Part shown: piece by piece, positions 1 to 46,800 of the stretch
How positions within the stretch are numbered: the first letter of the stretch is position 1
Layout: each line of letters starts with the position of its first letter
Notes under the pieces: model-generated
What the model saw: only the letters and a program-made list of their open reading frames with translations
What the model was told of the DNA's origin: nothing
The model's database searches: none
Program-made: the position numbers and the translations under genes
Assembly (NCBI GenBank): GCA_002269645.1
Contig: NIVC01002826.1
Location: 73,731 to 137,730 of the forward strand
Reading direction: 5' to 3'
DNA length: 64,000 nucleotides
Origin: Macrostomum lignano
Taxonomy: Eukaryota

Positions 1-165
1 GGATCGCTGATAAAAAAGCGTAATGTAAAAAATAAAAGAAGCTTCATGTCGAAGTTAAGAGATTCATTTGGGAATCCCTACGATGTTGAGGCTTGCAAGG
101 AATTGCTATAATGCTGTAGTAGTGCTATAATGACTCTTAGAGAGAATTACTGAAATTTCAATGCT

Positions 166-227
166 TTAGGGTTAGGTTAGGGTTAGGGTTAGGGTTAGGG
201 TTAGGGTTAGGCTAGGGTTAGGGTTAG
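166..227 (+). repeat. Interstitial telomeric repeat (TTAGGG)n, about 10 units
   Basis: ttagggttaggttagggttagggttaggg... with one TTAGG unit and a degenerate ttaggctaggg stretch, embedded in non-telomeric sequence on both sides. Confidence 0.9.
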
Positions 228-1485
228 AAGGTTGACAGATATTTTTAGATTTCCAAGGCTTATTGGGGCATTGCTGAGATGTCAAGGGGGGAAGTTGATA
301 TGTTAAAGCTTGTGGGGGAGATAACTGACATGTCAAGGCTTACAAGGTTTGACAGGAGATTTTTTAAGATTTCAAGGATACATGTAGCTTATTAAAAAAA
401 CGTGTATTGCATTTCTTTGGCTCCCCAACGGGGGGCGTAGATTGCTAGTGACCTCTAAATCTCTCTATGGCGACCTGCATGACTCCCTACGGTATAATGA
501 TCTCCCAGACGATACCTTGACCCCACCTGATAATGAATATGACTTTCTGAATGCTGGCAACTGCTTACTGGACCTCCTCATTCACTGCCGATCTTTCGTT
601 GTGTACTTTGCGCATGCGCCCCATACTTCTACAGTACATGTACGAGTATATTTAAGGTGCCCTACCTGTACATAAGTACCTGAAGTCTCCAATATCATTC
701 GAATATGGTGGAGTCACAACAGAAGCGGCAGAGTTTCATTTCTCTTACTTCTCATTTTGGATAACAGTACAGAGATAACCGTGAAAGCAGCTACAAGATC
801 AAGACATAAGACTTTGGTGTTGTGTGATTTAATTTAATATATCGAATATTTTTATTTACCCAAATCACCCTTCGCTTTCATTCATTCAAAACGAGTTTTT
901 GTTCCAACGAGTTTACACAAAGCAGCAGAAAAATAACTTAATTTTTATTTTGATACGGTACAATGGCCAAGACCAGTCACCATGGGATACGATAGGGGGG
1001 CGCGGGCGGTTTACACCCGAGTTTCGGGTTGACAAAAGTACAGAAAATAGTTTTCATTCTGGACTTACAGAACTTTTGAATAGAATTATCAATGTATAGT
1101 TATGGATGCAGTTCTGCACAACCAGTCACCCTAATGGAGATGATTATTGATTTGGAGTTTGACCAGGTCTATTTGGAATTCGCGAACTTGTCAATTTTGG
1201 ACAAGTTTCATTCCTTGGATCGGAGATCGACAGGGGAGCAATAAGTTTGAAAACCTGATTTTTCATTTTCAAGTACTAGAAGCTATTCTTACCTTTTTAG
1301 AAGTTAGTGGACTGTGGAGAATTGAAGGAGAGAAGAAGAGACGTTGGAAAACAATTTAAAAAACAAAATGTGTGTTTTACTTTTGTTATACTGCATCAGT
1401 TTGTTAAATTTTAATCGCGCCTATTTGAACAATTTAAATTCGTGCGCGAATTGTCTCTGAGAGGCTGCGCTAGCAGGGCGGGACA

Positions 1486-2550
1486 TCAGATGACCGCGCA
1501 GCACACGTTGCCGGGCTGCTGGTCCTTGACGTTCTTGTTCACGTCGCCCTCCTTGCCGTTGGCGGTGGCCTCGCCTTCTTTCTTCTCGCCGCCCTGACGA
1601 GTCGCAATTTGGGGGAGTTGGTATTATTCGAGATTAGGTGTATAAAATGGTGCATTATTTGTTTCGGGTCGGGTTAGAAATGCCAATACATGTAATAAAG
1701 TCACAATGTGTACATTTTTGCCGCAGTGGAAATGGTAGACTTAGTGATCTACGAAGCTAGATGTACGCAGCAGGTGCATTGAAAGGGACAGCTGTGTTAA
1801 AAAATGTGATAAGCTTGATGAAGACGCTTAGCGCTAAATATCTTGTGCTTTGAGAGTGAAATCCATCAATTATCGAATAAAAATCACCTGTTGAATTTCA
1901 CCTCCTCTTCGAACTGATACTATTATCTCACCTGTTCGTCATTTGGTGTTGCACTGTCTGGCTTTTGGGATTCCTGCATCCGGGATGCGGTTTGCGATGC
2001 GAGATTGGTCACGGATCTGCATTTTGTTCCCTTTAACAGCCTGGGGCTTCAATAGTAAAATTAACGGGGCCACTCACCTCTGCAGCAGCGGGCGTCTCTG
2101 CCGGCTTCTCCTCAGTCGCCGGAGCCTGCGGGAGTTACACGAGGGCCGATTTGGGGCTGCTCAAGGAGGCCAGTGAGATCAGAGAGAAAGCAAAGCAAAG
2201 TGCTTTCCACCCGGGCAGTCGAGAGAGTAACATCAATCTTGCTTGGTCACAAAAGCAACAAAGGGGAAAAGGAAAAAAGTTTTCTTTGTCAACTCGGTCA
2301 TACAATCGTAGTTGAAACACTTCAAATCTTTGCAAAAGGAAATTGGAAATCGGAAGAAACTCTGCAAACCGCAATAAAAGATCTATCAGCTTCACATGAA
2401 GATGCTGTTACATTTTATCAGCTTTACCTCAGCCTCAGGGGCGGGAGCTGCAATAATTATTGAATTAGAAATGAAAATCCACTTCAATCAACAGCACTTG
2501 TCATCAACTCACTGCAGAGAGTCACAGTACTCACCCGCTTCCTCTGACAT
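1486..2550 (-). CDS. Small acidic 63-aa protein with C-terminal CC/CaaX motif, four short coding exons
   Basis: Exons 2550-2535 (16 nt, donor GTGAGT), 2447-2428 (20 nt, ttgcag/GTAAAG), 2125-2078 (48 nt, ccgcag/GTGAGT), 1593-1486 (108 nt, TGA). Phases 1,0,0 join in frame: MSEEAAPAPEAEAPATEEKPAETPAAAEGGEKKEGEATANGKEGDVNKNVKDQQPGNVCCAVI*. Confidence 0.8.
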
Positions 2551-3325
2551 TATTCAGGAAGTTCTTGCTGGCGTTCTCGCTGAAGCAATCAAGCAGAAAC
2601 AGTCGCTAAAGAAGAGAAGGTGGCTGGCGGCGTTGGTGGTGGCTGGAGGGAGGGTCGAGTTTTGCTCCGCGCGCCGCGTTTCATATCCTGGTCGAGCCGC
2701 TTCACTGAGGGACCCTCCTTCGCTCGGGGCGAGAGAGGGACAGAGGGGAAGAAATCGATTTGAGATCGGGCTGTGCGCGCACACGGCTACTCTGGCCATA
2801 TCTACACTGCAGCATTTGGCTGGGAGCAACTTCTCTGCAGCAGCAGCGGCAGCAGCAACAGCAGCTGTTTAGCGAAGAGTTTTCGGGGCAGCCCTTAAGA
2901 GCTGGAGGGCTGCGGGGAGTGTCCATAACTTCTGTTGCTACATTCCCTTCCCGTGTGTGTGTGTCTCCCCTCTATTATCCCCCCAGCCGGGAATCGATTT
3001 CTGTGCACTGCTGGGGCTGAGCCCGGGGACCTGCATATGGCGACTGCAATGCTATTTGGACCGCACTGCATACTAAGCCCGCCCACGTGTATTCAGAAAT
3101 TGCTGCTAAGTCTGCAGTGCTTAGATCTGTCTCGATCACTCTCTCGCACAGTTTGAAGTTGGACAATTGGACTTTTCCTTCTCTCTCCGAGATCAGCCCA
3201 CTGTTATAGTTTAGTCCGGACCATCTTCGTATTCGAATAGCTCTCAAGGATCATGCATCTTATCATTGCCTGTTGCTTTTTGGAAAATAGTGCAGTTGCG
3301 GTTGCAAGCTAATGTGATACTGCTG

Positions 3326-3406
3326 ATGAGGCTATTGCTGATGGGGCTATTGCTGATGAGGCTATTGTTGATGAGGCTATTGCTGATGAGGCTATTGCTG
3401 ATGGGT
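3326..3406. repeat. 15-bp minisatellite (GAGGCTATTGCTGAT), about 5 copies
   Basis: Direct tandem copies; same unit and orientation as 4822-5160. Confidence 0.9.
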
Positions 3407-3410
3407 CTAC

Positions 3411-3645
3411 GAAGTTTGCCAGCCGACGTTTGCCAGCCGACGTTTGCCTGCGGGACGTTTGCCTGCGGGACGTTAGCCAGCCGACGTTTGCCAGCCGACG
3501 TTTGCCAGCCGACGTTTGCCAGCCGACGTTTGCCAGCCGACGTTTGCCAGCCGACGTTTGCCAGCCGACGTTTGCCAGCCGACGTTTGCCAGCCGACGTT
3601 TGCCAGCCGACGTTTGCCAGCCGACGTTTACGGCCAGCCAACATT
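3411..3645 (+). repeat. 14-bp minisatellite (GCCAGCCGACGTTT), about 16 copies
   Basis: Tandem units with occasional GCCTGCGGGACGTTT variants. Confidence 0.95.
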
Positions 3646-4426
3646 AAGTCAGTGAGTGAAAAATTTGATACTGAAATATTCGCAATTTAGCGGTTTGAAA
3701 AAAACCGGTTTTTAGTCCAACATTTTCGCAAGTATAAAAGTTCGAAAACAAAATCTATACAAATTATGCAGTTCATCAATCTAGCATCTAGTTTAAGAAT
3801 AATTTCTTTGAATGTGAAAATATTATAAAGTTTACTTCTGACAGTTTTGTATCGCTTTTCCCAGTTTGAGATGTTTGATTTTTGATTTGCGAATGAAGAC
3901 GCGCAAATTTAAACGAGAATCTCCAGCGAGCCAAGTTTTGGGCAAATAAAAGACCTGCTGAACGATAATTCTGGCTTATATATTTCCCAGTTCATTGGGA
4001 GATCCAAAAGTAAGCGAATTAATTCCAATGATGCTTGTCAAGTGCACGCTGTCATGGCCAAAACTCCGTTAAGCAGAGTTTGGCTTTTGAGTTAAGTATA
4101 GGCGAGACTAGGCCAATACCATTATGGATGTCTCAGTCTTTTCCCATTTAGCTTGTAAACATTTAGCTTGTTTGGCCAAGATGGAAAGGGCCGTTCCATG
4201 GCATTCATAGGCATCAACTGTGACGGTGGAAACTCCTATTTTGTATTTGACCTTCCTATTTAGGCAGAAAAGAGCAACAACTTCAATAAGCCTGAACAGT
4301 AGTTTGTTAGTAACCTGCATATTTATTAGCAGTGTAGGGAGCGAGCTGGAATTAGATTCGTGCTGTGTCCACAGTTTTCAAATGCAAGTACATGTAGGCC
4401 TAGAGAGGGCATAATTCTTTAATCAA

Positions 4427-4810
4427 TTGCCGCCTGCAAATGTCCGGCAGGCAAACGTCGGCTGGCAAACGTTGGCTGGCAAACGTCCCGCAGGCAAACG
4501 TCGGCTGGCAAACGTCGGCTGGCAAACGTCGGCTGGCAAACGTCGGCTGGCAAACGTCGGCTGGCAAACGTCGGCTGGCAAACGTCCCGCAGGCAAACGT
4601 CGGCTGGCAAACGTCGGCTGGCAAACGTCGGCTGGCAAACGTCGGCTGGCAAACGTCGGCTGGTAAACGTCGGCTGGCAAACGTCGGCTGGTAAACGTCG
4701 GCTGGCAAACGTCGGCTGGCAAACGTCGGCTGGCAAACGTCGGCTGGCAAACGTCGGCTGGCAAATGTCCCGCAGGCAAACGTCGGCTGGCAAACGTCCT
4801 GCAGGCAAAC
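4427..4810 (-). repeat. 14-bp minisatellite (AAACGTCGGCTGGC), inverted relative to 3411-3645
   Basis: Reverse complement of the 3411 unit, including the AAACGTCCCGCAGGC variant. Confidence 0.95.
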
Positions 4811-4821
4811 ATCGCTATCCC

Positions 4822-5160
4822 ATTGCTGATGAGGCTATTGCTGATGGAGCTATTGCTGATGAGGCTATTGCTGATGGAGCTATTGCTGATGAGGCTATTG
4901 CTGATGGAGCTATTGCTGATGAGGCTATTGCTGATGGAGCTATTGCTGATGGAGCTATTGCTGAGGAGGCTATTGTTGAGGAGACTATTGCTGATGAGGC
5001 TATTGCTGATGAGGCTATTGCTGATGGAGCTTTTGCTGAGGAGGCTATTGCTGATGAGGCTATTGCTGATGAGGCTATTGCTGATGAGGCTATTGCTGAT
5101 GGGGTTATTGCTGATTAGGGTTATTACTGATGGGCGATTGCTGATGGGCGATTGCTGATG
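4822..5160. repeat. 15-bp minisatellite (GCTATTGCTGATGAG/GGA), about 20 copies, degenerating at the right end
   Basis: Tandem units; source of the ADEAI and MRLLL ORFs. Confidence 0.95.
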
Positions 5161-5199
5161 GGGCCAATCAATATGCTGACAAGGTGGTAATTGGACAAA

Positions 5200-6250
5200 A
5201 AACAGAGGGTCAATAATATTAATAATGATAATCTCATGCCCCGCGCCGACCACACAAGTGGCCAAAACGGGAGGGGGGCGTCAAATCGTGCTCTTCAGGG
5301 CAAGGTCTCTGACGTGCTTCACGCCGGCTGCCTGGATGGCTGCTCGCGCATCATCGAAAAGACGGTCGATGCGCCTGCGAGGTCCCTGCGGAGTCCACAG
5401 CAGGACGTCCTGCAGCGGCTCTGGGCAGAATTCTTCGGCCCGGATGACACGCCCGGCAAGCCGCAGACGTCGCTTGCGCTCAGCAGGACAGAAGGCCGCG
5501 TCAGGCGCTCTCGCTGGTACAAGGAGTCGGTCGTCTCGCTGCCAGGGCCGCGGCGGGCGCCGAACGCGGCACGAACCAGAGCCGCGTGCGCCGCGTCGAG
5601 CTGCCTCTCGAGCGCCCCGGTCAGCGTCCAGGTCTCAGCATTGTACAGGAGGGCGGTCTCGACAACAGCCTGGAACAGCTGGGACCTGGCGCTGTCCGAA
5701 AGGGCCCCGAGAGCAGCACCGCTCGAAAAGATCGAAAGGCAGCCCAGGTCTTGCCGCGCCGTCTCGCCAGGTCGTCGCTCACGTCTGGCACCAGCCCGCC
5801 GAGGTAGAGGAACTGACAGCACTTCGGGAGCACCGTCCCAGGGCCGTCGCCGTCTGAGTCGTATCTCGGCGGGTAGATCGTGGGGCACCATCAGCACCTC
5901 GGTCTTTTTGGCGTTGAGGACGAGACCGACTCTCGCAGCCGACGCAGTCAAGCCATCCAGCAGCCGTTGGGCGCCTTCGGCCGTCGTAGACAGCAGGGCG
6001 AGGTCGTTCGCGTAGCCGAGGAGGGACAGCCTCTTCTCCGAGTGTCGCCGACTGGTGCGCCTTTGCAATAGAAAGCCTTCTCAGCGTCAGATGTTGGTTG
6101 CCAGGCAAGTTGCAGTTGCTCGACTGTGCGTCGGGCTTCTCAGACCTCCGAGTCGCTCGCCCAAACCGGAAGTCGCCGTGACGCGGGTGCCTTGGTCTTG
6201 CAGGGCGCGGAAATATCTTCTTCTGGGGCGATGGAGCGGTCAATGCAAGT
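5200..6250 (-). mobile_element. RTE-like non-LTR retrotransposon fragment, copy 1 (apparently internally deleted, frameshifted)
   Basis: GFLLQRRTSRRHSEKRLSLLGYANDLALLS (YADD variant), LVLNAKKTEVL, VETALLYNAETWTL thumb motif; 3' end followed by an ATT-rich tail near 5215-5235. Confidence 0.85.
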
Positions 6251-7289
6251 GCTAATCGAACTAAATTTTTAATATCATTTAAATTTCAAACATAAAAAGC
6301 TATTTTTATTTTCAAAGCTGACTACTGGACTAAGATGATATCAGTAGTCTCGTGCGCCAACTTTACGAGGTATTATTCTTTGCATTGTTGTTGAGACCAA
6401 CATTGAAATGAGGTATAGGAATTTAACAGACATTCAATCCTCTACTTGAACGCAAGTCTGCACATTTAGCAGTGTTCTAAATGTAATTTTTATGATTATT
6501 TCTGCCAAGCCCGACTATAAACTGAAATTTTGAATCGCACGGCTCACTAAGCATGGAGGGGACTCCGCTGAGGAGCTGGGAAAATTGAATTTCACTTCGA
6601 ATAGCTCGAGCCCCCCCCCAGTTTCTCCCGTTCTCTCTAAGTTTTTAGCCTGCAAGCTCGCAGTTTTTTCCAGATTCCTTCATCTAAATTCCCGCCATTT
6701 CCTTCCCAGCACTCCCTTTTCTTAGTTTGTACTTTTCACCCTCCCAAGAGGGGAGAATTCCCCCTGCGGCTTGCGTTATCTCAGACTCGCTGAGCAGAGG
6801 GAGAGAGAGGAGAGTTAGATAGCTCAGAAACTATATAGCCTATAGGAGCTCAGAAGACGCGATCAAGAGGCTGCGGAATCAATGGGTTTGTAGAATTTTG
6901 ATTGACAGGCCTCTTGGCGCTCTGTAGCGATTGCAGACTCACGCGCGCTCCGCGATGCTGCATGGCCTCAGCTGTGTCCTTACTTACCCACTGGGAATGC
7001 CACTCCCCATTGTCCCAGTAGTGCGCCCTGACATGCACTGAATGCAATTCAATATGCTCACTCAGACCCGCTGACAATGAGCTGCCGAGAGAGAGCTCTT
7101 CGCGCTAGAAGCTGTGACGATGCAGCTAGCTGGAAATCTTCTGTTAACCTAGCATTCATTTGAAATGGTGCTGCCTGAGATTCTGCATTAATAAATTATA
7201 ATGCTTGGACCGTGAGCCCGTGTGAGTAAGTAATACCATTCCTGCATGCACCACTTCTTGAACCAACCGCTTTACCGGGGTCTGATACC

Positions 7290-8896: not shown

Positions 8897-9428
8897 GCGC
8901 CAGCACCAAGGGGCGCCAGCACCAAGGGGCGCCAGCACCAAGGGGCGCCAGCACCAAGGGGCGCCAGCACCAAGGGGCGCCAGCACCAAGGGGCGCCAGC
9001 ACCAAGGGGCGCCAGCACCAAGGGGCGCCAGCACCAAGGGGCGCCAGCACCAAGGGGCGCCAGCACCAAGGGGCGCCAGCACCAAGGGGCGCCAGCACCA
9101 AGGGGCGCCAGCACCAAGGGGCGCCAGCACCAAGGGGCGCCAGCACCAAGGGGCGCCAGCACCAAGGGGCGCCAGCACCAAGGGGCGCCAGCACCAAGGG
9201 GCGCCAGCACCAAGGGGCGCCAGCACCAAGGGGCGCCAGCACCAAGGGGCGCCAGCACCAAGGGGCGCCAGCACCAAGGGGCGCCAGCACCAAGGGGCGC
9301 CAGCACCAAGGGGCGCCAGCACCAAGGGGCGCCAGCACCAAGGGGCGCCAGCACCAAGGGGCGCCAGCACCAAGGGGCGCCAGCACCAAGGGGCGCCAGC
9401 ACCAAGGGGCGCCAGCACCAAGGGGCGC
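8897..9428. repeat. Perfect 17-bp minisatellite (GCGCCAGCACCAAGGGG), about 31 copies
   Basis: No variant units seen; explains six overlapping ORFs in the track. Confidence 0.97.
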
Positions 9429-12400
9429 ACGACAGTCACTAAAACAGTCATTATCTCACATTCAAGACTACCAATATACTTTTCGAAGCCTTTTACTTTT
9501 GGTTGCATTTGACTTGAGGTTAATCTAAAAGTCTGAATTGAATTAATTTCTTTGCTGGATGCGAGAAAAAGCGAAAGCACACAAGCAAAATTGAGCCTTC
9601 AAATAAATTGTCCCATAGAGCAACGAGTGTTTTGCAGAGAGTCTTGCCTGGGCCTGGGACTGCATGGGACACAATCATGATCGTCTTATGATCTTCAAAT
9701 GCGATCAAATACTAGAATGCCGCGGGGTCCAGAGCCGCGCTCTGAAGCTTATGGGGGGGGGCTCAGCTTTATAGACGGTTGAATTTTTTTCCTAGTTTTT
9801 CTGCTTTTAGCCAAAAATCCGAGAGCAAAGTCGGGGGACGTTCTTATTATAGAGTTTCAGACTATAAATATTGAGCAGAACTCATCAATTCTCTTAAGGC
9901 AGCAGTAGACGAGAGGAAGGTAGCAGTGCAGGCGGGAGGCGGTTCCTTCTCCCATGGCCAATGCACCGAAATCCCAACACCCTTTTTCTCCCTGAAATTC
10001 TGGAAGCAAGCTAGTTGTTAAAATATTCAAGCGCATATAGCGGGGGGCTGCAGAGCGGTATGAAAGAAAGAAAGTGAGAACGAAGCCATTGCTGTGACAC
10101 GAAATCCGCGACTCTCTAAAGTCCGGACTGCATGGGGGGCTGAGGCCGGGCTGCGCACGGGGAACGGGGGGGAGGGTATGTGGGACGGGGACACGCGAGG
10201 GCCGTTGCTAATGGTTACGCAGATCTTACCTACTAAGCTCCCCCCTATCCAAACACAATGGGGCCCAGAGCTGAGCTGTGTGAGGGCGGCAGCTGCAGTG
10301 TCTGCAACTGCTGGATTCTGTCCTCCCAATGGCCCAGCCAGCCATTGAAGTGAATATGGTAGACAAAAAAGCATCCGGGCATTTCTTCCAACTCGCCTAT
10401 TGTCAATGTCTGAATTATGGGAACAATGAGAATTTTTAATATTCTATTATTCGCTTGTATTTCTTTTCATAGTTCAAAGAAATAAACAATAATGAAAAAG
10501 CAGGCATACTATGATAATAAAAGGGCCGCCAGTGCGACCTTTGACTGATTTACTTAGGCAACAAGACCTGCTACCAGGTGGGCGTTCAAGCAACAGAATG
10601 CAATGCGGCATTCACAGTGAGCCAATTGACTAGGATTTTCGTTCAACAGCGTCGTTCATTCCTCTATCGGACATCATTACCTGACAGTATTAGAGTTGGA
10701 AAACTATTTAAAAATGATAGTATTTATGTCCAATATTGTCAGGTAAGACGTCGTCAATAATCAACAGAGGATCAAATAATTATTGTATCATTTGTATGGG
10801 AGGGATGAAAGGCTTGGTGCAAAACAAGTGAACTGATCTTTTATATTGACCTATATATACTAGAAAAAATTACCTTGTAAAGGGTATAGATCTATAAATA
10901 ATCAGTGAGTGAGCCGTTATGAGTCTCATACACTTACCTTGAGTATATATATACTTTACTTGATTGAGAATAAAAGCAGACAAATGCTGAGAGTGGAGCC
11001 AGCTCAGAGTCAGCCAGTCTGGGGAGAGGACAGGGGGGCTGACCGGACCTGCATTTTAAGGCCTTCTCTGTACCCAAGGGGTGGAGAGGTGGGGGGAGAG
11101 AAGGGGGCGGGAGCTGACAGGTAGACCCAGCTGGCCAACCAGAACGGCACACACACACACAGTTGGGTGCAGAGATGGGGTCCTGCTCCGGACAGCCCCA
11201 ACTTTGTGCTTGCGTTGGAAGAAAAAAAAGAAAAAAATCAGGCAAATAAAATACCAGCAGTCCTTGGACAACTTATAGTATAAAAATATGCAAAATCTGA
11301 AAGATCAAAAGATTTGAGCTAGACACCACTGTCGAAATTGACTCGCCAGGGAATATTGGAATCGCTTGTACCACCTCTTATATACATAGTTCGAACTTCG
11401 AATACTTTTCGCAGCCATAAATTAAATAGCCGAACCCATGGCAGAAGTAGAACAAAGAATAAAATACAACTGTAATATATCCTACAGAGACCTGCAAGTG
11501 CGTAAATACGTCCTGTAAAGCTGGCAGGGTTATTGTTGTTATGCTTGAACAAGTCAAGAACAAGAAGCAATCTGGGCCGAGCGATCCGAGCACTGATAAA
11601 GCGGCATTCCCAAAAAAACTGGGTTTGAAGACTTCAGCCCCAGCTGTCTTGTCCAAAGACAAAGTACTCGTTAAATTCCCAGCCGCAAAAATTCTTCCTA
11701 CAGGCAAAACCTTCCAATATACCTCTCCTCCTCTAAGCGGAGACACTCAAAACTGGGAGTGGAAATGGGATTTGCCAATTCCTGAGTTAAAGGGAACGGA
11801 GATGGAGACGAGAAGCTGAGCACTCCATCGTGCACGCAGGTGGAGGACAGTGGGACTATGGGGTTAGTCGATCGGTTTTGCCTAGTCTCATGAATCTCTC
11901 CCAACCTCTCCTCCACTCCGCTCCCTCCTTTCGGTTGTGCGCGCATCCCGCCAAGTGCATGCAGTACGCAGAGGGGCAGAGAGGAGCGGTGGCCCCCGCT
12001 GCTTGACTCCCCTACCCCCTTGACGTCCCTCAAGGCCCGCAACTCCAAAGCAAACCCAGCTCTGTCAGGCGGGAGCAGCACTGTAAAGAATGCTGCAAGC
12101 GATTAAACGATTCCGTGCAGACACCCCCCTGCAGCCTCAGCTCCTCGTTACTATTTATGCCTTTAGTTGACGAGTACGCGGATCGTTTTATGGATCGTAC
12201 GGGACATTTGCAAGGTGGGGCTCACCGGTCAATACCTTAATAACGAGATATGAATGCAGGTTGTGGGCGTTGTCGGTCTGTATGAGTAAATATAGTCTTA
12301 CAGGCCAAAGCATGATCCCACAGATCGATCAGTCAACTCAACCATTGCCCCTTTATGCTTTTTAACTGTTCTCTAACCGTAGTCGACAGCAAGCCATCTG

Positions 12401-22466: not shown

Positions 22467-25400
22467 TTAGGCGGCAGAGCTCGGACCGCCAGCAGCGGCG
22501 CCGCCAGTCGCCTGTTCAAGAGCGCCCTCCTGGCAGCAGCGCTTCAGATCGGCCAGGAAGCCCTCGGGAGTGAGGATGTGCGTCCCGCCGACAATCACCT
22601 CCCAGTTGCGCTGCTTAGCGGCCTGGCTAACCTCGTAGGCGCAGCGCATCTCGCTGTAGGTGAAGCCGCCGGCGAAGAATACAATTAGGCGAGGCCCGGC
22701 CGCCTTCTGCTGCGGCCCCTTCTGCTGCTGGTGCCACTGGCCATAGCGGGAGGGCACCGCGCCGCCCGGGCGGGGCCGCTGAGGCACGCTGCCCAGGAAT
22801 GGGAACATCTTCTGGTCCAGGCGGTCCTCGATGGCGTCCTCCATCACGTCCTTGATGAATGGAGTCCAGCGGCTAAGTTGGTATTGGGTGGCGTTCTCGC
22901 GCTCACGGCGGTGGCTCGGCAGGTAGGGCTGCGCGGCCTGCGGGGGGAGAGTGGGAGTTCTTTTACAGACTTGAGTCGTGTGCATGCATAAGGCAGGGGA
23001 TGGGGGTCAGGTGTGTGTACAAAGGATGGGATGGTCATGACATGTGTGTGTACAAAAGATGGGATGGTCATGGCAGTTGTGTGTACAAAGGATGGGATGG
23101 TCATGACATGTGTGTGTACAAAGGATGGGATGGTCATGGCAGGTGTGTGTACAAAGGATAAGATGGTCATGGCAGGTGTGTAGATAGGATGGGGGATGGT
23201 CATGGCAGGTGTGTACATAGGATGGGATGGGGTCATGGCAGGTGTGTACATAGGATGGGATGGGGTCATGGCAGGTGTGTACATAGGATGGGGGATGGTC
23301 ATGGCAGGTGTGTACATAGGATGGGGGATGTTGATGGCAGGTGTGTACATAGGATGGGGGATGTTGATGGCAGGTGTGTACATAGGATGGGGGATGGTCA
23401 TGGCAGGTGTGTACATAGGATGGGGGGTGGTCATTGCAGGTGTGTACATAGGATGGGATAAGGGTCATGGCAGTTGTGTACATAGGATGGGATAAGGGTC
23501 ATGGCAGTTGTGTACATAGGATGGGGGATGGTCATTGCAGGTGTGTACATAGGATGGGGGATGGTCATGGCAGGTGTGTACATAGGATGGGGGATGGTCA
23601 TGGCAGTTGTGTACATAGGATAAGGGATCATGGAAGGTCAAACACCTTACACCACCCTGAAAAAGCACACAAAGGTTTCAGTCACCCAGCTAGTTAAAGA
23701 AAAAATGATTCAGTCGTTCACCTTGCGTCGCCCGCCGTCCATCAGTCCGCCGACGCCGCCTTTGCCGTCCTGAATAACCGGCACGCCGAGATTGGCGGCA
23801 TTCAGCAGTATGGGCTTCTCCTGCTCGGGAATCTGGCCGTGCTGCAGCAGCTTGGCCAGGTTCTCCTCGGACACGCCGGTCTTGTGAATCACGTACAGCA
23901 GAATGATGCGCAGCTTGTCGTAGGCGGTCACTGAGGCGTCCAGCAGGATGGGCACGATGGCGCGCATGTGGTCGCGAACTTTCTCGCCGTCGGCGTCGCA
24001 GCCCATGGCGAGGTCCTGCTCCACCTGGCGGAGGCGGGCAACAGTTGCGTTTAACGAGGGTTCAGAGATGCACAAGGACCATTGGAATTTTCTAGTAGTC
24101 CTTGAGAGTGCGTCAGGCGATCAGGTCGTGAATAAGGGAGGATTAGGGTGTGAATAAGGGCGGATTGGAGACAGCAGGGGTGGATTTGGATCAGTAGGAG
24201 CGGATTTGGATCAGTAGGAGCGGATTTAGATCAGTAGGAGCGGATTTGGATCAGTAGGGGCGGATTTAGATCAGTAGGGGCGGATTTGGATCAGTAGGAG
24301 CGGATTGGGGCTAGCAGGGGCGGATTGGGGCTAGCAGGGGCGCATTGGGGACAGCAGGGGCGGATTGGGGCTAGCAGGGGCGGATTGGGGCTAGCAGGGG
24401 CGGATTGGGGCTAGCAGGGGCGGATTGGGGCCAGCAGGGGCGGATTAGGGCTAGCAGGGGCGAATTGGGGCTAGCAGGGGCGGATTGGGGTCAGCAGGGG
24501 CGGATTGGGGCTAGCAGGGTGGATTGGGGCTAGCAGGGGCGGATTGGGGCCAGCAGGGGCGGATTAGGGCTAGCAGGGGCGCATTGGGGACAGCAGGGGT
24601 GGATTGGAGCTACTAGGGGCGAATTGGAGACAGCAAGGGCGGATGGGGGCAACTAGGGGCGGATTGGAGCTAGGAGGGGCGGATTGGGGACAGCAGGGGC
24701 GGATTAGGGCTAGCAGGGGCGGATTGGGACTAGCAGGGGCGGATTAGGGCTAGCAGGGGCGGATTGGGGCTAGCAGGGGCGGATTAGGGCTAGCAGAGGC
24801 GGATTGGGACTAGCAGGGGCGGATTGAGACTAGCAGGGGCGGATTGGAGCTACCAGGGGCGGATTGGGACTAGCAGGGGCGGATTAGGGCTAGCAGGGGC
24901 GGATTAGGGCTACCAGGGGCTGATTGGGACTACCAGGGGCGGATTGGGACTAGCAGGGGCGGATTAGGGCTAGCAGGGGCGGATTAGGGCTACCAGGGGC
25001 TGATTGGGACTAGCAGGGGCGGATTAGGGCTAGCAGGGGCGGATTAGCGCTAGCAGGGGCACATTGGGGACAGCAGGGGCGGATTGGGGCTAGCAGGGTG
25101 GATTGGGGCTAGCAGGGGCGGATTGGGGCCAGCAGGGGCGGATTAGGGCTAGCAGGGGCGGATTAGCGCTAGCAGGGGCACATTGGGGACAGCAGGGGCG
25201 GATTGGGGCTAGCAGGGTGGATTGGGGCTAGCAGGGGCGGATTGGGGCCAGCAGGGGCGGATTAGGGCTAGCAGGGCGGATTAGCGCTAGCAGGGGCACA
25301 TTGGGGACAGCAGGGGCGGATTGGGGCTAGCAGGGTGGATTAGGGCTAGCAGGGGCGGATTAGGGCTAGCAGGGGCGGATTAGGGCTAGCAGGGCGGATT

Positions 25401-28400
25401 AGCGCTAGCAGGGGCACATTGGGGACAGCAGGGGCGGATGGGATGGGAGTCAAAGACAAGACTCAGTATTGCAATGATGCAATAATGCAACAAGCGTGTC
25501 AAGCACAGCGGGTTTCCCTTCACCTTGCAGAGCTTGTCCACCCGGCCAGTGTAGGCGCGCATGCAGTCCTCAGCCAGATGGAAATGCGTACTGTAAGCGC
25601 TGAGCTCCTTCTGATACTGGGGCATCTTTTTCATCATCTGGGCCAGATCGCGAACCCCCGTGCCGCCGGCGCCCATCCGTTTTGAGTCGGAGAACTGCTT
25701 GAGCTTGGCGGTGACATTCTGGCCAACAACGGCAATGTGCAGGTGGCGCAGCTCCACCCAGAGATCGTCGCGCTCGTCTAGCACAACCTCGCGCTCGCGC
25801 TCGTCTCCGGCTGTGGTGCTCACGTACTTGTAGACGTCGTTCTCGATTGGGATCAGATCGTAGGCCATGGCCTGCGCACGTGTTTTCGGGGATGGCCACT
25901 TTTGGATTCGCAATGCAACTTTTGGAATTATGATGCCATTTTTGGATTCGCAATGCAACTTTTGGAATTATGATGCCATTTTTGGATTCGCAATGCCACT
26001 TTTGAATTCGCAATGCCACTTTTAGAAATTCGAATGCCATTTTAGGATTCGCAATGCTACTTTTGGATTCGCAATGCCACTTTTGGATTGGCAAATGGCA
26101 AAACCTCAAATCAAACCTGGTTTCCAAGAAATGTCTATGGCAAAACCTCAAATCAAACCTGGTTTCCAAGAAATGTCTATGGCAAAACCTCAAATCAAAC
26201 CTGGTTTCCAAGAAATGTCTATGGCAAAACCTCAAAGCAAACCTGGTTTCCAAGAAATGTCTATGGCAAAACCTCAAAGCAAACTTGGTTTCCCAAAAGC
26301 CCAAATTTTTACCTGAAAGGTGAGCTCGTGCAGCAGCGGAGTGACGGGATCGGCCCCCCTGTCCAGCACAATCAACAGGCTGCGATCCTTCTGCGGCCCC
26401 TCGCCCATGGAGGGATCGTCAGCTTTGTACTGCTCCAGCTTGAAGTTGATAGCGTTGGCGAACTGATGGTTGGTCTCGTTGAATGCCCGGTAGCGAATAG
26501 TGGGAAATTCGCCTAGCGAGGCGCACAGGGTGGCGATCTGCTCGGCGATGCGGTCCAGGTGCTGCGCTTTGCCAGCCTGGTTGCCAAGGAAATAATGGAA
26601 AATCGTGTCCGGACTATCCAGACTGAACACCTGGCTCTCGTACGGCAGGAAAGCGATGTTGATCTCTTTCAGAGTCTTAATAAACTTGCTAGTTGGACTT
26701 TTGCACAGCTCGCTAAACAGGTCGTCTGGACAGGCCTCGGTGAAGAACACGTGAGCGGCGCGGTATTGCATTCGGACCCCGCTGAAGTCCGCCATCAGCA
26801 GCTGGACAGATTCGCGGGTCGGCTGCAACAAATAAATTGCTTCTAGGGGCAGTGGTTCGCGTTTCTTGGACACGTCCTCCACCAGGGTGATGCCCTCGGA
26901 CATGATCTCGTGCATGCGGCAGCAGGCGCTGATCATGCGCATTGACAGCTTGTCCACGATCAGCACCTTCCAGTCGCCCTCCTTCTTCAGCGAGTGGATC
27001 ACCTCGCGCATGATTTCTGGTGGGGGATGGGAATCGAAATTCAATGCTTTGGTGTGGAGTTAAGGACTAGTCTCGGACATATATGAGCACAGGTGATTGG
27101 AAGCTATTCATAGTACAAGGATCTGGGAATACCGCAGATCTACAGTATGAGGGGTGGAATATTGCAGATTTAAGGTACAGGGATTTCTTGGGAATACAGC
27201 CGATCTGTAATACGAGGTTCTAGAATATTTTAGATCTATAATATAAAGATATATGAGGATCTAGAAATATTGCAGATCTATAGTATCTATATACTAAAAA
27301 TGATAAGGAACTAAGAATGCCATAGATTTATAATTTGAAGTTGGAATACTGTTGTTGCTTTTTAGTTAAATATTTTATTCTAGCATTCTTAAAATGCATT
27401 TCAAGTCGAAAGAGCTGCTTGACATTTGCAAAAAGCATGTTTTTGAACATTTAATCCCCCCTTAATATTGAGCAATTTCTTAGCCAAGACATATGTACTG
27501 TCATAGAAAAACTTCTAATCGAACAATGCAAGTTTGAAGAAAATTGGTTAAACCATTTTTGTTAAAAATTGATCACACACACATGCACATATAGATAGAC
27601 AATTTTTGGTATATGGTGGATAAATAAATAATATAACTGAGTATTAAGTTTGGTATCATTTTAAAGCATGGAAAGGTTTTGTAGCTTTGAATGAATTTTT
27701 TATGATTTATTTTAAAAAATGCTTCTAAGTTTTATAATTTCTGAACAATTTTATTTATAGAACTATAAGAATAGCCTTTAAATATAAGTGCTACTTGTTA
27801 AATTTTTATAAAAAAGATAAATATATTTCACAATTTGGCATAATAATTTATAAATATCTTAATATTTATTATTAGAAAACTAGACTTCAAAAACAAAAAT
27901 GATTTGAATAAAAATATATATTATACAATAAAAGTTTTTTTATGATTAATAAATTTAATTATACAGTATATAAAAATATTAATTCTTTGTTATAAATTTA
28001 ATTTTTATAGACAAATAAAACTGAGCAATTTGGCAATAAAACTCTATCTTGTTGACTCTAGTCTGGTAAAAATAATGCAAAATAAATTCCAATAAGCTGT
28101 TAATATTATTGTCATTAGTAAGATTTTTGAAAATGAAATACCTAAGTTTGTATTATATCTACAATATGGACTTGGCTACTATTACTTGGCTATACCTTTG
28201 TCTGGCTAACCTAATTGAATTTAAATATCTTTGAGTTAAAAAATACCTGAATAACTGAATTTAATCAACTTTAATAATTCTACTACAACATTATGCATTG
28301 TTTTCTAAATAGGCCCCAGTTCTTTAATCATAAGAAATTAAAGTAATTAAATATATATAGTATTTACATTGTATACCCCTAACAAAAATGAAAAAACACA

Positions 28401-43803: not shown

Positions 43804-46800
43804 TTAGTAAACCACCTGTTGGCGAACTTCGATGATTTCATCTTCCAGCACAGCCGTCGGGTCGGGCTCGACGTATATGGGGTACGCCTTCTGCACCCCC
43901 TTCAGCTCCTTCGAGATGAACGACACGATGAAGTTGCGCTCACCGCAACGGACTGGGGTCAGGGTGATGCTGCAGCTGGCTTTGTCACCCGGCTTCACCT
44001 GGCTACAATGTTATCAGTTTAGATGAGTAGCTTGCATTTCATTGACGCTGTGGGTATCTCGAATCCATTTTATCTTATGGCATAGGACAACGTCGCGAAA
44101 TTTGAGCTCTGCACAATCGCCAAGAGCCATACTCGTAAGAGCTCAAAAACGAATATGCTTCATTCCTCCATATTAACCCATAAATTCCAAAGATTTATCA
44201 ATCTTAAAGCTATAAAAGTACTCTTTTAGTGTCTTCTCGTCTCTAGAGCACCCCAAACAATTTTAATTTAACGACTGCTCACCCAACGCTCTTATCCATG
44301 CTCTTTCCGCGCAGTCCCGGACCTTCGATGCTGAACCGGGCGTCGCTCAGGGCGAAGGGCACCGGATTGACAAAGGTGCACTTGAAGTGGAAGGCCTTGT
44401 TCTGACAGACTTCACCCACAATCTAAAAAATGATTAGAATAGCGAATTAGTCAATTAGCTCTAAGCCTAGCATAGAAAAGAAAAAGCAGGTTACAACGGC
44501 AGATGCACCTCAATGTCAAGTTCCGGATTGAACAGGTGCACAATTGTCTGCTTCACCACTTTGTCATTTCCATCGATTCCGACGGCGACAATTTCAATGC
44601 CAACTTCCTCGCAGCCGGCGGAGTTGGTATAGTCCGCTGACTGGATGGCCAGCTCAACAGGAGATGCTGAAGGATATTGATAGATTTTCTAACTTACTTG
44701 ATGCTACCGACTTTTGAAACTGAGGTACACGCAGACACAGGGATACTCACTGCTGCTGCCCTTGACAGTGACTTCACCCTTTTCGAAGGCCAGCTGTCGG
44801 ATGACCTTGCCGTTGTACTGCTTCAAGTTAGCCGCAATTCCAAACAGGATTTTCTTGTCGGTGCGAGCTCCGTTTGTCAGCTCCAGGGTCACCTTAATGT
44901 CGCCGCCAATCACCAGGTACTCTTCCGTGGCAATGTTGAGTTGCAGGTTGCGCCTGCGCTTATTGTCATCGTTGCGTTCTACTTTGATTTGCACCTTCTT
45001 GGAATTCTTGGCCGCCCGGAAAGCTGCATCTTCCTCACGACTGCCCTCTGGGAATTTGTACTGGTCAGTGATGTCTAGACGGTCTTCCGAGCCCACCGCC
45101 TTAGTGCTGATGCTTCGGCCCACCTTGGTCGGATCGGAGTAGAGCTCCTTGTTAGTGCCATCGGCGTTCTTCTGCCAGTGCTTGATACACGCGTTCACTT
45201 CCGCATAGATGAACGGCGTGTCAAAATCGACGTCCAGTTTGCCTTGTTTGATGGCCTTGACTGGGCAGGGGCCGGTGCGGAAGATGCTGTCGCTGCGCTC
45301 CTGCGGTGTTGCGTCCACGGCCTGCCAGCCGTCGAAGTCGCCGCCGAGGTCCGGCCGCTTCATCCACAGATCGTTCCACACGTGGAAGTTCCTGGAGAGA
45401 TAATTTTGTTGGTAAGCATATTTTGAGCTCTAAACCTGATCTAATTCAGTAGCTGGCAAATACATGTATTTTTTTATTTATAATAGTTATTATAGTTATT
45501 ATAGTTGCTTGCGTAATACTCGTAGTTCAACGTAAAAAACATCATTAATTTTATTTAGACTTTCCAAGCTAGCACTCATTGGTGCACTCACTGAATTAGC
45601 TCCCTCTTTTGCATTGCGGATTATCGACTTGTTGGTCCTGTTGTAGTTTGTTGTCATTATTTTTGTTACTTAGTAACTGCCTAGTAACCTAGTAGCTGAT
45701 ACTTTACAGTATATTCATACACAAACCCACCAGATGCTGTCCGAGTTCAATTCAGCGATGGGGGCGAAGGTGTCGTTAAAGAAGCTGTCAACAATCAGGT
45801 TGCAGTTGGTGTCGTGAGCAGAGTCAAAGTTGGTCACACTTCGGGCCGGAATGCCGAGAGCTCGGGCAACTAAGGACAGGAATAGAGATTTTACGGCTCA
45901 GAGGAATCTTCAGATCCCAGCATGTGTCAGTTCACAGTTTAGGTCATTTGAATGGCAGAAAATCCGACTTACGAGACGTCATAAGGCCGGAGAAGACCCA
46001 GCACTGTCCGAACTTTACCGGCGTTTTCGACTCGTAGTACTTGGCAATGATGGCCAGGCTGCCTCTCCATTCGGTTGGCGCCACGCCTCCGGCATAGTCG
46101 CCGCTCCAGTTGCCCACAAGGACGCCGTTGTCGTCGTTGCTGTTGACCAGAGCGGAGAGCGAGCGCGCGACGCTGACGGGGTCGCCCCAGCTGTCGAAGG
46201 GCAAGCCGGACTTGGCCAGCAGATAGTAGGCGCAGTCCAGCACGGGGTCGTCGAACTGCGATGAAAAAGGAATTCAGACTTCAGAGCGCATTGCTAGTTT
46301 GTGCCGTAGACTCTTGGTTCCAGGCTCTGTGCGCCGGTCTGTTACAATTTTCTATTCAACTACATATATATGATTTACCTGACCAAAATTCCACGACTTG
46401 CTTCCTATGCTGCGAGACGAGCCGAAGTACACCCTGCCGGTGCTCTCTAGAACGTACTCCCGACATTCAGCGCCGCTCTCCAAGTAGACGGCATCGTCTG
46501 AAAAAGATTATTCTCTTTGAGCATTAAAACATTTGAGCCTATTCTTGGTATCTTTATCGGATTCGCAAATGGCGAACGAATGACAGTTTGATTCTGGCGT
46601 ACTTTCTTTCTCAACAATGAACAATACATTTACAAACTGAAGTAACCATCAACCTACCCGGACAAAACGGGTTGTAGACCACTGATATGGGAAACTTCAT
46701 GTCGTAGTTGAAGGTGATCTCCAGGCTGCGAGTCGCGTACATCTGCGTGATCCAGTACTTGGCAGTGATGCAGTTCTTGGCAGTGTAGAACACAACCGTC

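What the first reader, a model, noticed from the sequence alone, without database searches (positions are those of the whole stretch)
1486..2550. Hidden four-exon gene for a 63-aa acidic, lipid-anchored microprotein (…NVCCAVI)
Seen: exons of 16, 20, 48 and 108 nt with canonical splice sites join in frame, and none is in the ORF track. The product is Ala/Glu/Pro/Lys-rich, likely disordered, and ends in CCAVI. Known: CaaX directs prenylation and an adjacent Cys is often palmitoylated. The composition recalls GAP-43/BASP1/paralemmin-type membrane proteins, but I recognise no homolog. Inference: a novel membrane-tethered microprotein; the phase-0/0 48-nt exon could be skipped.
Basis: partly seen in the sequence, partly recalled or inferred. 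Interest (0 to 1): 0.75.

Follow-up and report, generated by a model that had tools for sequence, protein, structure and literature searches.

The report
Unannotated flatworm CaaX-tailed acidic microprotein gene
A small, well-formed four- or five-exon gene in the flatworm Macrostomum lignano probably encodes a 63-77-residue acidic, disordered protein whose CCAVI end should attach it to membranes by lipids, but it has no detectable relatives and no expression data could be checked.

Summary
On the minus strand, exons 2550-2535, 2447-2428, 2125-2078 and 1593-1486 join in frame through GT...CAG introns to give a 63-aa protein ending in CCAVI. This is more than chance. Exon 4 has the codon bias of the window's real genes in the claimed frame only (GC3 0.94). 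The seven best donor sites in 3.9 kb all lie inside the gene. The chain scores about twice the best chain in reversed-sequence controls. A flatworm-type trans-splice acceptor motif lies upstream of the ATG and an ATTAAA signal lies 70 nt after the stop.

The window is Macrostomum lignano. I add a possible in-frame 42-nt cassette exon (1973-1932), which would give 77 aa.

No homolog was found by any search, and the protein is absent from a 15-billion-protein collection. It does not look like the tail of a longer gene.

CAVI fits published prenyltransferase rules, and the neighbouring Cys is a plausible palmitoylation site. Lipidation, expression and function remain inferences.

Verdict: a probable real, orphan, lipid-anchored disordered microprotein. 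This is a new member of the broad CaaX-protein kind, of moderate interest. Whether the Mlig_3_7 transcript catalogue already lists it could not be checked.

The parts
2580..2585 (-). CTTCAG after a pyrimidine tract (gtttctgcttgattgCTTCAG). Candidate SL trans-splice acceptor or cis 5'-UTR acceptor; the first exon base would be 2579. A second candidate, ttctcttcTTTAG, has first exon base 2605.
   Evidence: It matches the M. lignano SL-acceptor motif [T/C]TNCAG reported in PMC8629364. Use of the site is not shown.
2551..2579 (-). Minimal 5' UTR (29 nt) with A at -3 of the ATG and an in-frame TGA at -6..-4.
2535..2550 (-). Exon 1 coding part: ATG TCA GAG GAA GCG G (M S E E A + 1 nt). Donor G|GTGAGT.
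   Evidence: Donor scores 6.9 bits, 98th percentile. All 11 best chains start at this ATG.
2428..2447 (-). Exon 2 (20 nt). Acceptor ttattgCAG, donor GAG|GTAAAG.
2078..2125 (-). Exon 3 (48 nt, phase 0/0), encoding APATEEKPAETPAAAE. Acceptor cccgCAG, donor GAG|GTGAGT, the best donor in 3.9 kb.
1932..1973 (-). Candidate cassette exon inside intron 3 (42 nt, phase 0/0), encoding ESQKPDSATPNDEQ. Acceptor gatgCAG, donor CAG|GTGAGA. Including it gives a 77-aa product.
   Evidence: It gives the top-scoring chain and has the second-best donor in the region. Its GC3 is only 0.36, so coding status is undecided.
1486..1593 (-). Exon 4 coding part (35 codons + TGA), encoding GGEKKEGEATANGKEGDVNKNVKDQQPGNVCCAVI*. 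There is no ATG between the upstream in-frame stop and the acceptor, so it must be reached by splicing.
   Evidence: GC3 0.94; +12.4 bits in this frame only.
1489..1503 (-). Codons for C59-C60-A61-V62-I63. The CaaX box is C60-A-V-I, with the adjacent upstream Cys59.
   Evidence: Prenylation rules.
1410..1415 (-). ATTAAA polyadenylation-signal variant, 70 nt after the stop and followed by a T-rich stretch. It implies a 3' UTR of about 90-100 nt.
   Evidence: It is the only AATAAA/ATTAAA in the 235 nt after the stop.

Best explanation
This is a real, small, stand-alone protein-coding gene of Macrostomum lignano on the minus strand (about 2605/2579 to about 1390). It has four constitutive exons, possibly plus a 42-nt cassette exon. 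The mRNA is about 350-400 nt and may be SL trans-spliced. It encodes a 63-aa (or 77-aa) protein that is strongly acidic (pI 4.3, net charge -8), has no aromatic residues and is predicted to be intrinsically disordered. Inferred mechanism: cytosolic FTase or GGTase-I prenylates Cys60 of the C-terminal CAVI box. RCE1 then removes -AVI and ICMT methylates the new C-terminus at the ER. The protein has no polybasic patch, so the adjacent Cys59 supplies the second membrane signal, most likely S-palmitoylation as in RhoB and paralemmin. The result would be a lipid-pinned polyanionic disordered chain on the cytoplasmic face of membranes. Shown: the gene anatomy and its coding statistics. Inferred: expression, lipidation, localisation and any cellular role.
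For: Exons, phases and product are verified. Exon/intron GC contrast. Codon bias and frame specificity of exon 4. The best donors cluster inside the gene and all acceptors are CAG, which matches the M. lignano cis-splice motifs GT[G/A]AG and CAG for two of three donors and all three acceptors. The chain scores 63-75 bits against at most 34 bits in reversed controls, and ranks just behind the window's known genes. An SL-acceptor-like CTTCAG lies 29 nt before the ATG and ATTAAA lies 70 nt after the stop. There is no donor of 2.5 bits or more in 2560-6986, and no coding-like stretch before any donor up to 17 kb. No Pfam domain is found in any minus-strand frame of 1-3300. Overlapping ORFs on both strands score negative. 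Disorder and charge are computed. GGTase-I accepts Caa[L/F/I/M/V]. In the yeast FTase screen CAVI has a Ydj1 HM score of 3.99, above the predictive cutoff of 3. A single prenyl group usually needs palmitate or a polybasic region as a second signal.
Against: No transcript, junction-read, ribosome or peptide evidence could be consulted. No homolog was found anywhere, so there is no conservation test of the reading frame or of the CC-aaX end. Exons 1-3 are too short to carry their own coding signal. Exon 3 scores -3.8 bits, about the same as a second frame. My splice and codon models are crude. An antisense-to-transposon chain on the plus strand also reached 75.8 bits, so GC-rich DNA can score this high. 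X = Ile is a secondary choice for both CaaX prenyltransferases. The acidic context near the anchor is unusual for plasma-membrane CaaX proteins.
Confidence: 0.5

Rival explanations
1. The locus is transcribed and spliced roughly as modelled, but the small ORF is not translated into a stable, functional protein. It would be a short non-coding or young 'proto-gene' transcript, and the CCAVI end would be fortuitous.
For: There is no homolog in 5.8e9 clusters, 1.84e9 representatives or the metagenome scans. The sequence is low-complexity. Exons 1-3 carry no frame-specific signal of their own.
Against: Exon 4 shows strong frame-specific codon bias typical of this genome's real genes: GC3 0.94 and +12.4 bits, with the other five frames negative. 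The ATG has a good context with A at -3. The frame stays open across three introns.
Confidence: 0.2
2. The protein is made but is not a stable lipid-anchored membrane protein. Either it is not prenylated, or it is prenylated but stays soluble or is bound by a chaperone.
For: Ile at the X position is not the optimal residue for either enzyme. CAVI's Ras-reporter score of 5.0 is far below CAVM's 16.6. Ykt6, which has a very similar C-CAIM end, is mainly cytosolic.
Against: CAVI passes the published predictive cutoff for yeast FTase and belongs to the GGTase-I Caa[L/F/I/M/V] class. Ykt6 hides its lipids in a folded longin domain, and this disordered protein has no such domain.
Confidence: 0.15
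3. Exons 2-4 are the 3' end, or an alternative 3' end, of a longer gene whose upstream coding exons lie beyond 2.6 kb, for example a GTPase with a CCXXX/CaaX tail.
For: Rab-type tails can end in CCXXX. The window starts only 1.4 kb beyond the gene. Introns of about 1.5 kb occur in the neighbouring STXBP1 gene.
Against: An in-frame TGA sits directly before the ATG, with no AG in between. There is no donor of 2.5 bits or more between 2560 and 6986, and no coding-like stretch before any donor up to 17 kb. The intervening DNA is minisatellites and a reverse-transcriptase fragment. No Pfam domain is found in any frame. Exon 4 matches nothing real among 1.84e9 proteins.
Confidence: 0.07
4. Chance. 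No gene is here; the chain is an artefact of picking short exons out of GC-rich patches.
For: Exons of 16 and 20 nt are easy to find. The model was found by eye. My null model is small (two reversed strands).
Against: The score is twice the best null chain. The seven best donors cluster inside the gene. Exon 4 has frame-specific codon bias. The 5' acceptor motif and the 3' ATTAAA are correctly placed.
Confidence: 0.08

Closest known systems
Paralemmin (PALM) C-terminus and RhoB C-terminus (C-CaaX: palmitoyl-Cys next to prenyl-Cys)
   Same: A Cys lies immediately upstream of the CaaX Cys (paralemmin ...CKC-CSIM and RhoB ...C-CKVL, both recalled from memory). The logic of prenyl plus palmitate as a two-signal membrane anchor is the same. 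Paralemmin is also rich in charged, disordered sequence.
   Different: No sequence similarity and no Pfam Paralemmin or Ras-family hit. At 63-77 aa it is far shorter than paralemmin or RhoB (sizes from memory) and carries no domain. It is strongly acidic, with no basic cluster near the anchor.
Ykt6 C-terminus (C194-C195-A-I-M)
   Same: The last five residues are nearly identical in type (CCAIM against CCAVI). Ykt6 is farnesylated on the CaaX Cys and geranylgeranylated on the upstream Cys by GGTase-III.
   Different: GGTase-III recognises the folded longin/SNARE body of Ykt6, and that body is absent here. There is no longin or SNARE domain. Double prenylation is therefore unlikely.
BASP1 / GAP-43 / MARCKS-type acidic disordered membrane proteins
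   Same: Ala/Glu/Pro/Lys-rich disordered composition, and lipid attachment at one end.
   Different: Those proteins are anchored at the N-terminus (myristoyl-Gly or palmitoyl-Cys-Cys; from memory). This protein starts MSEE and is anchored, if at all, at the C-terminus. There are no Pfam hits. The similarity is in composition only.
G-protein gamma subunits and fungal a-factor-type precursors (very small CaaX proteins)
   Same: A size of a few dozen residues, and a C-terminal CaaX box as the main functional element.
   Different: There is no G-gamma (GGL) domain hit. Unlike a-factor precursors, the residues before the Cys are hydrophilic rather than a hydrophobic mature peptide (a-factor features recalled from memory).

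Membership tests
CaaX prenylation substrates (functional class) | Cys at position -4 from the C-terminus, directly followed by three residues and the stop codon | tested here: met
   C60-A-V-I-stop.
CaaX prenylation substrates (functional class) | a2 and X residues compatible with FTase or GGTase-I | tested here: met
   a2 = Val and X = Ile. GGTase-I accepts Caa[L/F/I/M/V]. CAVI has a Ydj1 HM score of 3.99, above the cutoff of 3 in the yeast FTase screen. These are yeast and mammalian rules, not flatworm data.
CaaX prenylation substrates (functional class) | An isoprenoid is actually attached in vivo | not testable with these tools
   This needs metabolic labelling or mass spectrometry.
Paralemmin family | Paralemmin domain (Pfam PF03285; accession recalled from memory) with a C-terminal CxC-CaaX | tested here: not met
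   No Pfam hit at E <= 10. Only the C-CaaX arrangement is shared.
BASP1 / GAP-43 | N-terminal lipidation signal (Met-Gly for myristoylation, or an N-terminal Cys-Cys plus IQ motif) | tested here: not met
   The N-terminus is MSEEAAP, with no Gly2, no N-terminal Cys and no Pfam hit.
G-protein gamma subunit | GGL / G-gamma domain | tested here: not met
   No Pfam hit and no PDB sequence hit.
Ykt6-type longin SNARE | Longin domain plus SNARE motif before CCaaX | tested here: not met
   The product is only 63-77 aa. No Pfam domain is found in the product or in any minus-strand frame of 1-3300.
Rab GTPase (CCXXX tail) | Small-GTPase domain upstream of the di-cysteine tail, needed for REP-dependent prenylation | tested here: not met
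   No Ras-family domain is found in any minus-strand frame of 1-3300. No coding-like exons lie upstream to 17 kb. The REP requirement is described.

The most novel reading that the evidence does not exclude
The product is not a resident membrane protein but the precursor of a small prenylated, carboxymethylated peptide. In this reading the acidic N-terminal part is a pro-region that is cleaved off, as in fungal a-factor-type pheromones. That would be the first lipopeptide signal of this type in an animal. A milder and much more likely version (about 0.4) is that it founds a Macrostomum-restricted family of dually lipidated, polyanionic disordered microproteins.
Probability: 0.02. Interest if true: 0.85.

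Novelty: new member of a known kind. Interest (0 to 1): 0.35.

Why it matters
If real, this is a concrete, easily testable case of a lineage-restricted microprotein that ORF-based tracks miss because its coding sequence is split into 16-108-nt exons. Its only recognisable functional element is a C-CaaX lipidation signal. M. lignano has mRNA injection and transgenesis, and heterologous CaaX tags have already been screened in its embryos. The protein's last ~20 residues could therefore be tested directly, and could serve as an endogenous membrane tag. A lipid-pinned, strongly acidic disordered chain is also an unusual combination, because most CaaX proteins use basic residues next to the anchor. 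It could say something about how charge near a lipid anchor affects membrane targeting. It does not bear on any long-standing open question.

Tried and rejected
- **Protein homology searches.**
  - The search for homologous proteins with the 63-aa protein found 116 word-sharing candidates and none with E <= 10.
  - phmmer of exon 4 against 1.84e9 representatives returned one hit. It is a bacterial protein with six tandem repeats (E 3.9e-8, summed over six stretches, 40% identity), and I reject it as repeat-inflated chance.
  - An exact look-up of the 63-, 77- and 47-aa isoforms in the 15e9-protein collection found none of them.
  - Pfam and PDB sequence searches found nothing.
- **DNA scans.** A metagenome scan with back-translated peptides and with a degenerate PGNVCCAVI* pattern found nothing. 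The first attempt failed because the query was too short.
- **Copies within the window.** tblastn and blastn of the gene against the window found no paralog and no repeat.
- **Source genome annotation.** I tried to reach it through the single-exon Sybindin-like ORF, which is not on record.
- **Literature.** A search for 'CCAVI' returned only noise such as 'peccavi'. 'NVCCAVI' is in no paper.
- **GGTase-I supplement.** The CXXX supplement held only raw read counts that I could not interpret, so I did not use it.
- **Rival genes.** The plus-strand 158-aa ORF 2396-2872 and the other overlapping ORFs have negative codon scores and no Pfam hit.
- **A side guess.** I suspected that a 2-exon gene at 52389-50551 is a fatty-acid-binding protein. 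Pfam does not support this.
- **Structure prediction.** Not attempted.

Full report
**Observation.** I read 1300-2800 on the minus strand and assembled the four claimed exons.
- Exon 1: 2550-2535 (16 nt).
- Exon 2: 2447-2428 (20 nt).
- Exon 3: 2125-2078 (48 nt).
- Exon 4: 1593-1486 (108 nt including TGA).

The donors read G|GTGAGT, G|GTAAAG and G|GTGAGT, and all three acceptors are CAG. The joined 192-nt reading frame gives MSEEAAPAPEAEAPATEEKPAETPAAAEGGEKKEGEATANGKEGDVNKNVKDQQPGNVCCAVI. An in-frame TGA lies two codons before the ATG with no AG in between, so this ATG is the first possible start for this exon. Exon 4 has an in-frame stop 11 codons upstream of its acceptor and no ATG in between, so it can only be translated after splicing. 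None of these frames appears in the mechanical ORF list.

**Is it more than chance?** Short exons are easy to chain, so I tested the signals separately.
1. *Composition.* Exons are 56-75% GC and introns 37-43%.
2. *Codon usage.* I built a codon table from eight confirmed coding stretches of this window, whose GC3 ranges from 0.55 to 0.84.
   - Exon 4 has GC3 0.94 and uses the same preferred codons: GAG 10/12, AAG 5/6, GGC 6/6, AAC 4/4.
   - A codon log-odds score corrected for the segment's own base composition is +12.4 bits in the claimed frame and -9 to -49 bits in the other five frames. Real-exon windows have a median of 9.8 bits. Exon 4 sits at the 99th percentile of 3227 stop-free background windows.
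   - Exon 3 is too short to discriminate frames (-3.8 bits).
3. *Splice sites.* Using a generic metazoan donor matrix, the three claimed donors are among the five best of 157 GT sites in 1300-5200. All seven best donors of that 3.9 kb lie between 1887 and 2534.
4. *Chain enumeration.* Only 45 legal ATG-to-stop chains end in exon 4. The eleven best all start at the ATG at 2550. The claimed chain ranks second.
5. *Window-wide control.* A crude chain finder run on the whole window recovers the known genes first. It then finds this locus at 74.7 bits, against 34.3 bits for the best chain in the two reversed-sequence controls.

One caveat applies to point 5. A plus-strand chain of 75.8 bits at 51.3-52.0 kb is probably antisense to a retrotransposon ORF, so GC-rich periodic DNA can reach this score. 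For the present locus, the antisense frames and all overlapping ORFs score negative.

**Organism and surroundings.** The Sec1/STXBP1 gene at 22.5-27.0 kb (minus strand) is identical to Macrostomum lignano UniProt entries. The exceptions are stretches where those older models look frameshifted. Other genes in the window are a rhodopsin-type GPCR, a KLF-like C2H2 zinc-finger gene, a Sybindin-like TRAPP subunit and reverse-transcriptase fragments. There is also a mir-8 family precursor. The finding's 1.5 kb is unique within the window.

**Gene ends.** Published M. lignano motifs are GT[G/A]AG for cis donors, CAG for cis acceptors and [T/C]TNCAG for spliced-leader acceptors. About 30% of genes are trans-spliced to a 35-nt leader that ends in ATG (PMC8629364).
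- Two of the three donors and all three acceptors fit these motifs.
- A pyrimidine tract ending in CTTCAG lies at 2585-2580, 29 nt before the ATG. A second candidate acceptor has its first exon base at 2605. Either could be an SL acceptor, but use of either is not shown.
- If the leader were added at 2579, its ATG would open a 10-codon upstream ORF whose TAA overlaps the main ATG (TAATG).
- Downstream, the only AATAAA/ATTAAA within 235 nt is ATTAAA at 1415-1410, 70 nt after the stop and followed by a T-rich stretch.
- The predicted mRNA is therefore only about 350-400 nt.

**A possible fifth exon.** Intron 3 contains gatgCAG|GAATCC...GAACAG|GTGAGA at 1973-1932. This is 42 nt, phase 0/0, has no stop, and encodes ESQKPDSATPNDEQ, which resembles the rest of the protein in composition. 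Its donor is the second best in the region, and including it gives the top-scoring chain, for a 77-aa product. Its GC3 is only 0.36, so I leave it as an undecided candidate cassette exon.

**Not the tail of a longer gene.** On the minus strand there is no donor of 2.5 bits or more between 2560 and 6986. No donor up to 17 kb is preceded by a coding-like stretch. The intervening DNA is minisatellite arrays and a reverse-transcriptase fragment. No Pfam family matches any minus-strand frame of 1-3300 or the 158-aa plus-strand ORF.

**Homology.** Nothing was found.
- The 63-aa protein gave no hit at E <= 10 among 5.8e9 protein clusters, and none in Pfam or among PDB sequences.
- Exon 4 against 1.84e9 representatives gave only a bacterial tandem-repeat protein, whose E-value comes from six repeated weak matches. 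I reject it.
- Two metagenome scans found nothing.
- The exact 63-, 77- and 47-aa sequences are absent from the 15e9-protein collection. That collection holds at least the two M. lignano UniProt entries seen. The gene therefore appears to be unannotated there.
- These resources seem to contain no Macrostomum transcriptome assemblies. The best non-UniProt STXBP1 hits were only about 60-65% identical. The absence of hits therefore says little about expression or about conservation within the genus.

**Product and likely mechanism.** The protein is 6.4 kDa, with pI 4.3 and net charge -8. It has no aromatic residues, 73% disorder-promoting residues, and falls on the disordered side of the charge-hydropathy boundary. 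Its only recognisable element is the end: C59-C60-A-V-I.
- Cys60 is a CaaX cysteine with a2 = Val and X = Ile.
- GGTase-I accepts Caa[L/F/I/M/V] (PMC11304957).
- In the comprehensive yeast FTase screen, CAVI has a Ydj1 heat-map score of 3.99, above the predictive cutoff of 3. Its Ras-reporter score is 5.0, like CAVL's 5.2 and far below CAVM's 16.6 (PMC10320760).
- Prenylation is therefore plausible, and the sequence alone does not say which isoprenoid.
- One prenyl group usually needs a second signal, either a polybasic patch or palmitate (PMC9141697). This protein has no basic patch, so Cys59 is the obvious candidate for S-palmitoylation. This matches the C-CaaX ends of RhoB and paralemmin, as I recall them.
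- Two alternatives seem unlikely. Double prenylation as in Ykt6 (C194-C195-AIM) needs recognition of Ykt6's folded body by GGTase-III. Rab-type CCXXX prenylation needs REP binding to a GTPase domain. Neither a folded body nor a GTPase domain exists here.
- Heterologous CaaX tags have been screened in M. lignano embryos (PMC12633465), so a direct test is practical.

The cellular role of a lipid-pinned polyanionic chain is unknown. I commit only to 'C-terminally lipid-anchored disordered microprotein on the cytoplasmic face of membranes', at roughly even odds.

**Comparison with known families.** It would work like the two-signal C-CaaX anchors of paralemmin or RhoB, and in composition it resembles BASP1, GAP-43 and MARCKS. 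It is not a member of any of these families.
- There is no Paralemmin, G-gamma, longin/SNARE or Ras-family domain.
- The N-terminus (MSEE...) lacks the myristoylation or palmitoylation signals that define BASP1 and GAP-43.
- It belongs only to the broad functional class of CaaX proteins, and for that class the sequence criteria are met.

**Verdict.** The locus is most likely a real orphan gene that a contiguous-ORF track cannot see. Missing small multi-exon genes is a common annotation gap, and CaaX anchoring is textbook. Interest is therefore moderate (0.35) and could rise if the protein proves conserved across Macrostomum or has a striking localisation. I could not check whether the transcriptome-based Mlig_3_7 annotation already lists this transcript.

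Noticed in passing
window 10667-10755 (-): A mir-8/mir-141/mir-200 family microRNA precursor (Rfam RF00241, 56 bits, E 1e-9, full-length model match). It lies about 8 kb upstream of the microprotein gene on the same strand.
   Followed up: no
window 166-227: An interstitial telomere-like array, (TTAGGG) x 10.7, at 89% matches.
   Followed up: no
window 3321-3629 and 4436-5164: Two composite minisatellite blocks in inverted orientation (a 15-mer array plus the 14-mer CGACGTTTGCCAGC array, and their reverse complements). They flank about 800 bp, like foldback or transposon ends. Just beyond the second block, at 5319-6243 (-), is an ORF I read as a reverse-transcriptase fragment, although Pfam found no family in it.
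   Followed up: no
window 8897-9428: A perfect (100% matches) 16-mer tandem array, GCGCCAGCACCAAGGG x 33, open in all six frames. It produces many spurious long ORFs.
   Followed up: no
window 22467-27044 (-): The STXBP1/Munc18 gene. The window's exons are 100% identical to M. lignano UniProt A0A1I8FU53 and A0A1I8JPJ6, except for internal stretches where those database models appear frameshifted. The window therefore carries a cleaner version of the gene.
   Followed up: partly
window 52389-52311 + 50924-50551 (-): My crude chain finder proposes a two-exon, 150-aa gene (MTENSALFGTWEGYKSENIEAVMEKA..., 81.9 bits). It reminded me of a fatty-acid-binding protein, but Pfam finds no family in it.
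   Followed up: partly
window 2551-2579 (-): If the 35-nt M. lignano spliced leader, which ends in ATG, is added at the CTTCAG acceptor, it opens a 10-codon upstream ORF (MRERQQELPE*). Its TAA overlaps the main start codon (TAATG), a layout that could couple termination to re-initiation.
   Followed up: partly
window 1311-1293 (-): About 100 nt downstream of the ATTAAA there is a strong acceptor (ctccttcaattctccaCAG) followed 19 nt later by AAG|GTAAGA, which looks like a mini-exon. It could be chance, or an outron/exon of a downstream unit that runs off the window start.
   Followed up: no
window 44704-45381 (-): An ORF containing GWQAVDATPQE, which I recall as the transglutaminase catalytic-core signature. 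Pfam gave no hit for this fragment at E <= 1e-3. The chain finder links it to four upstream exons, up to 48487.
   Followed up: partly
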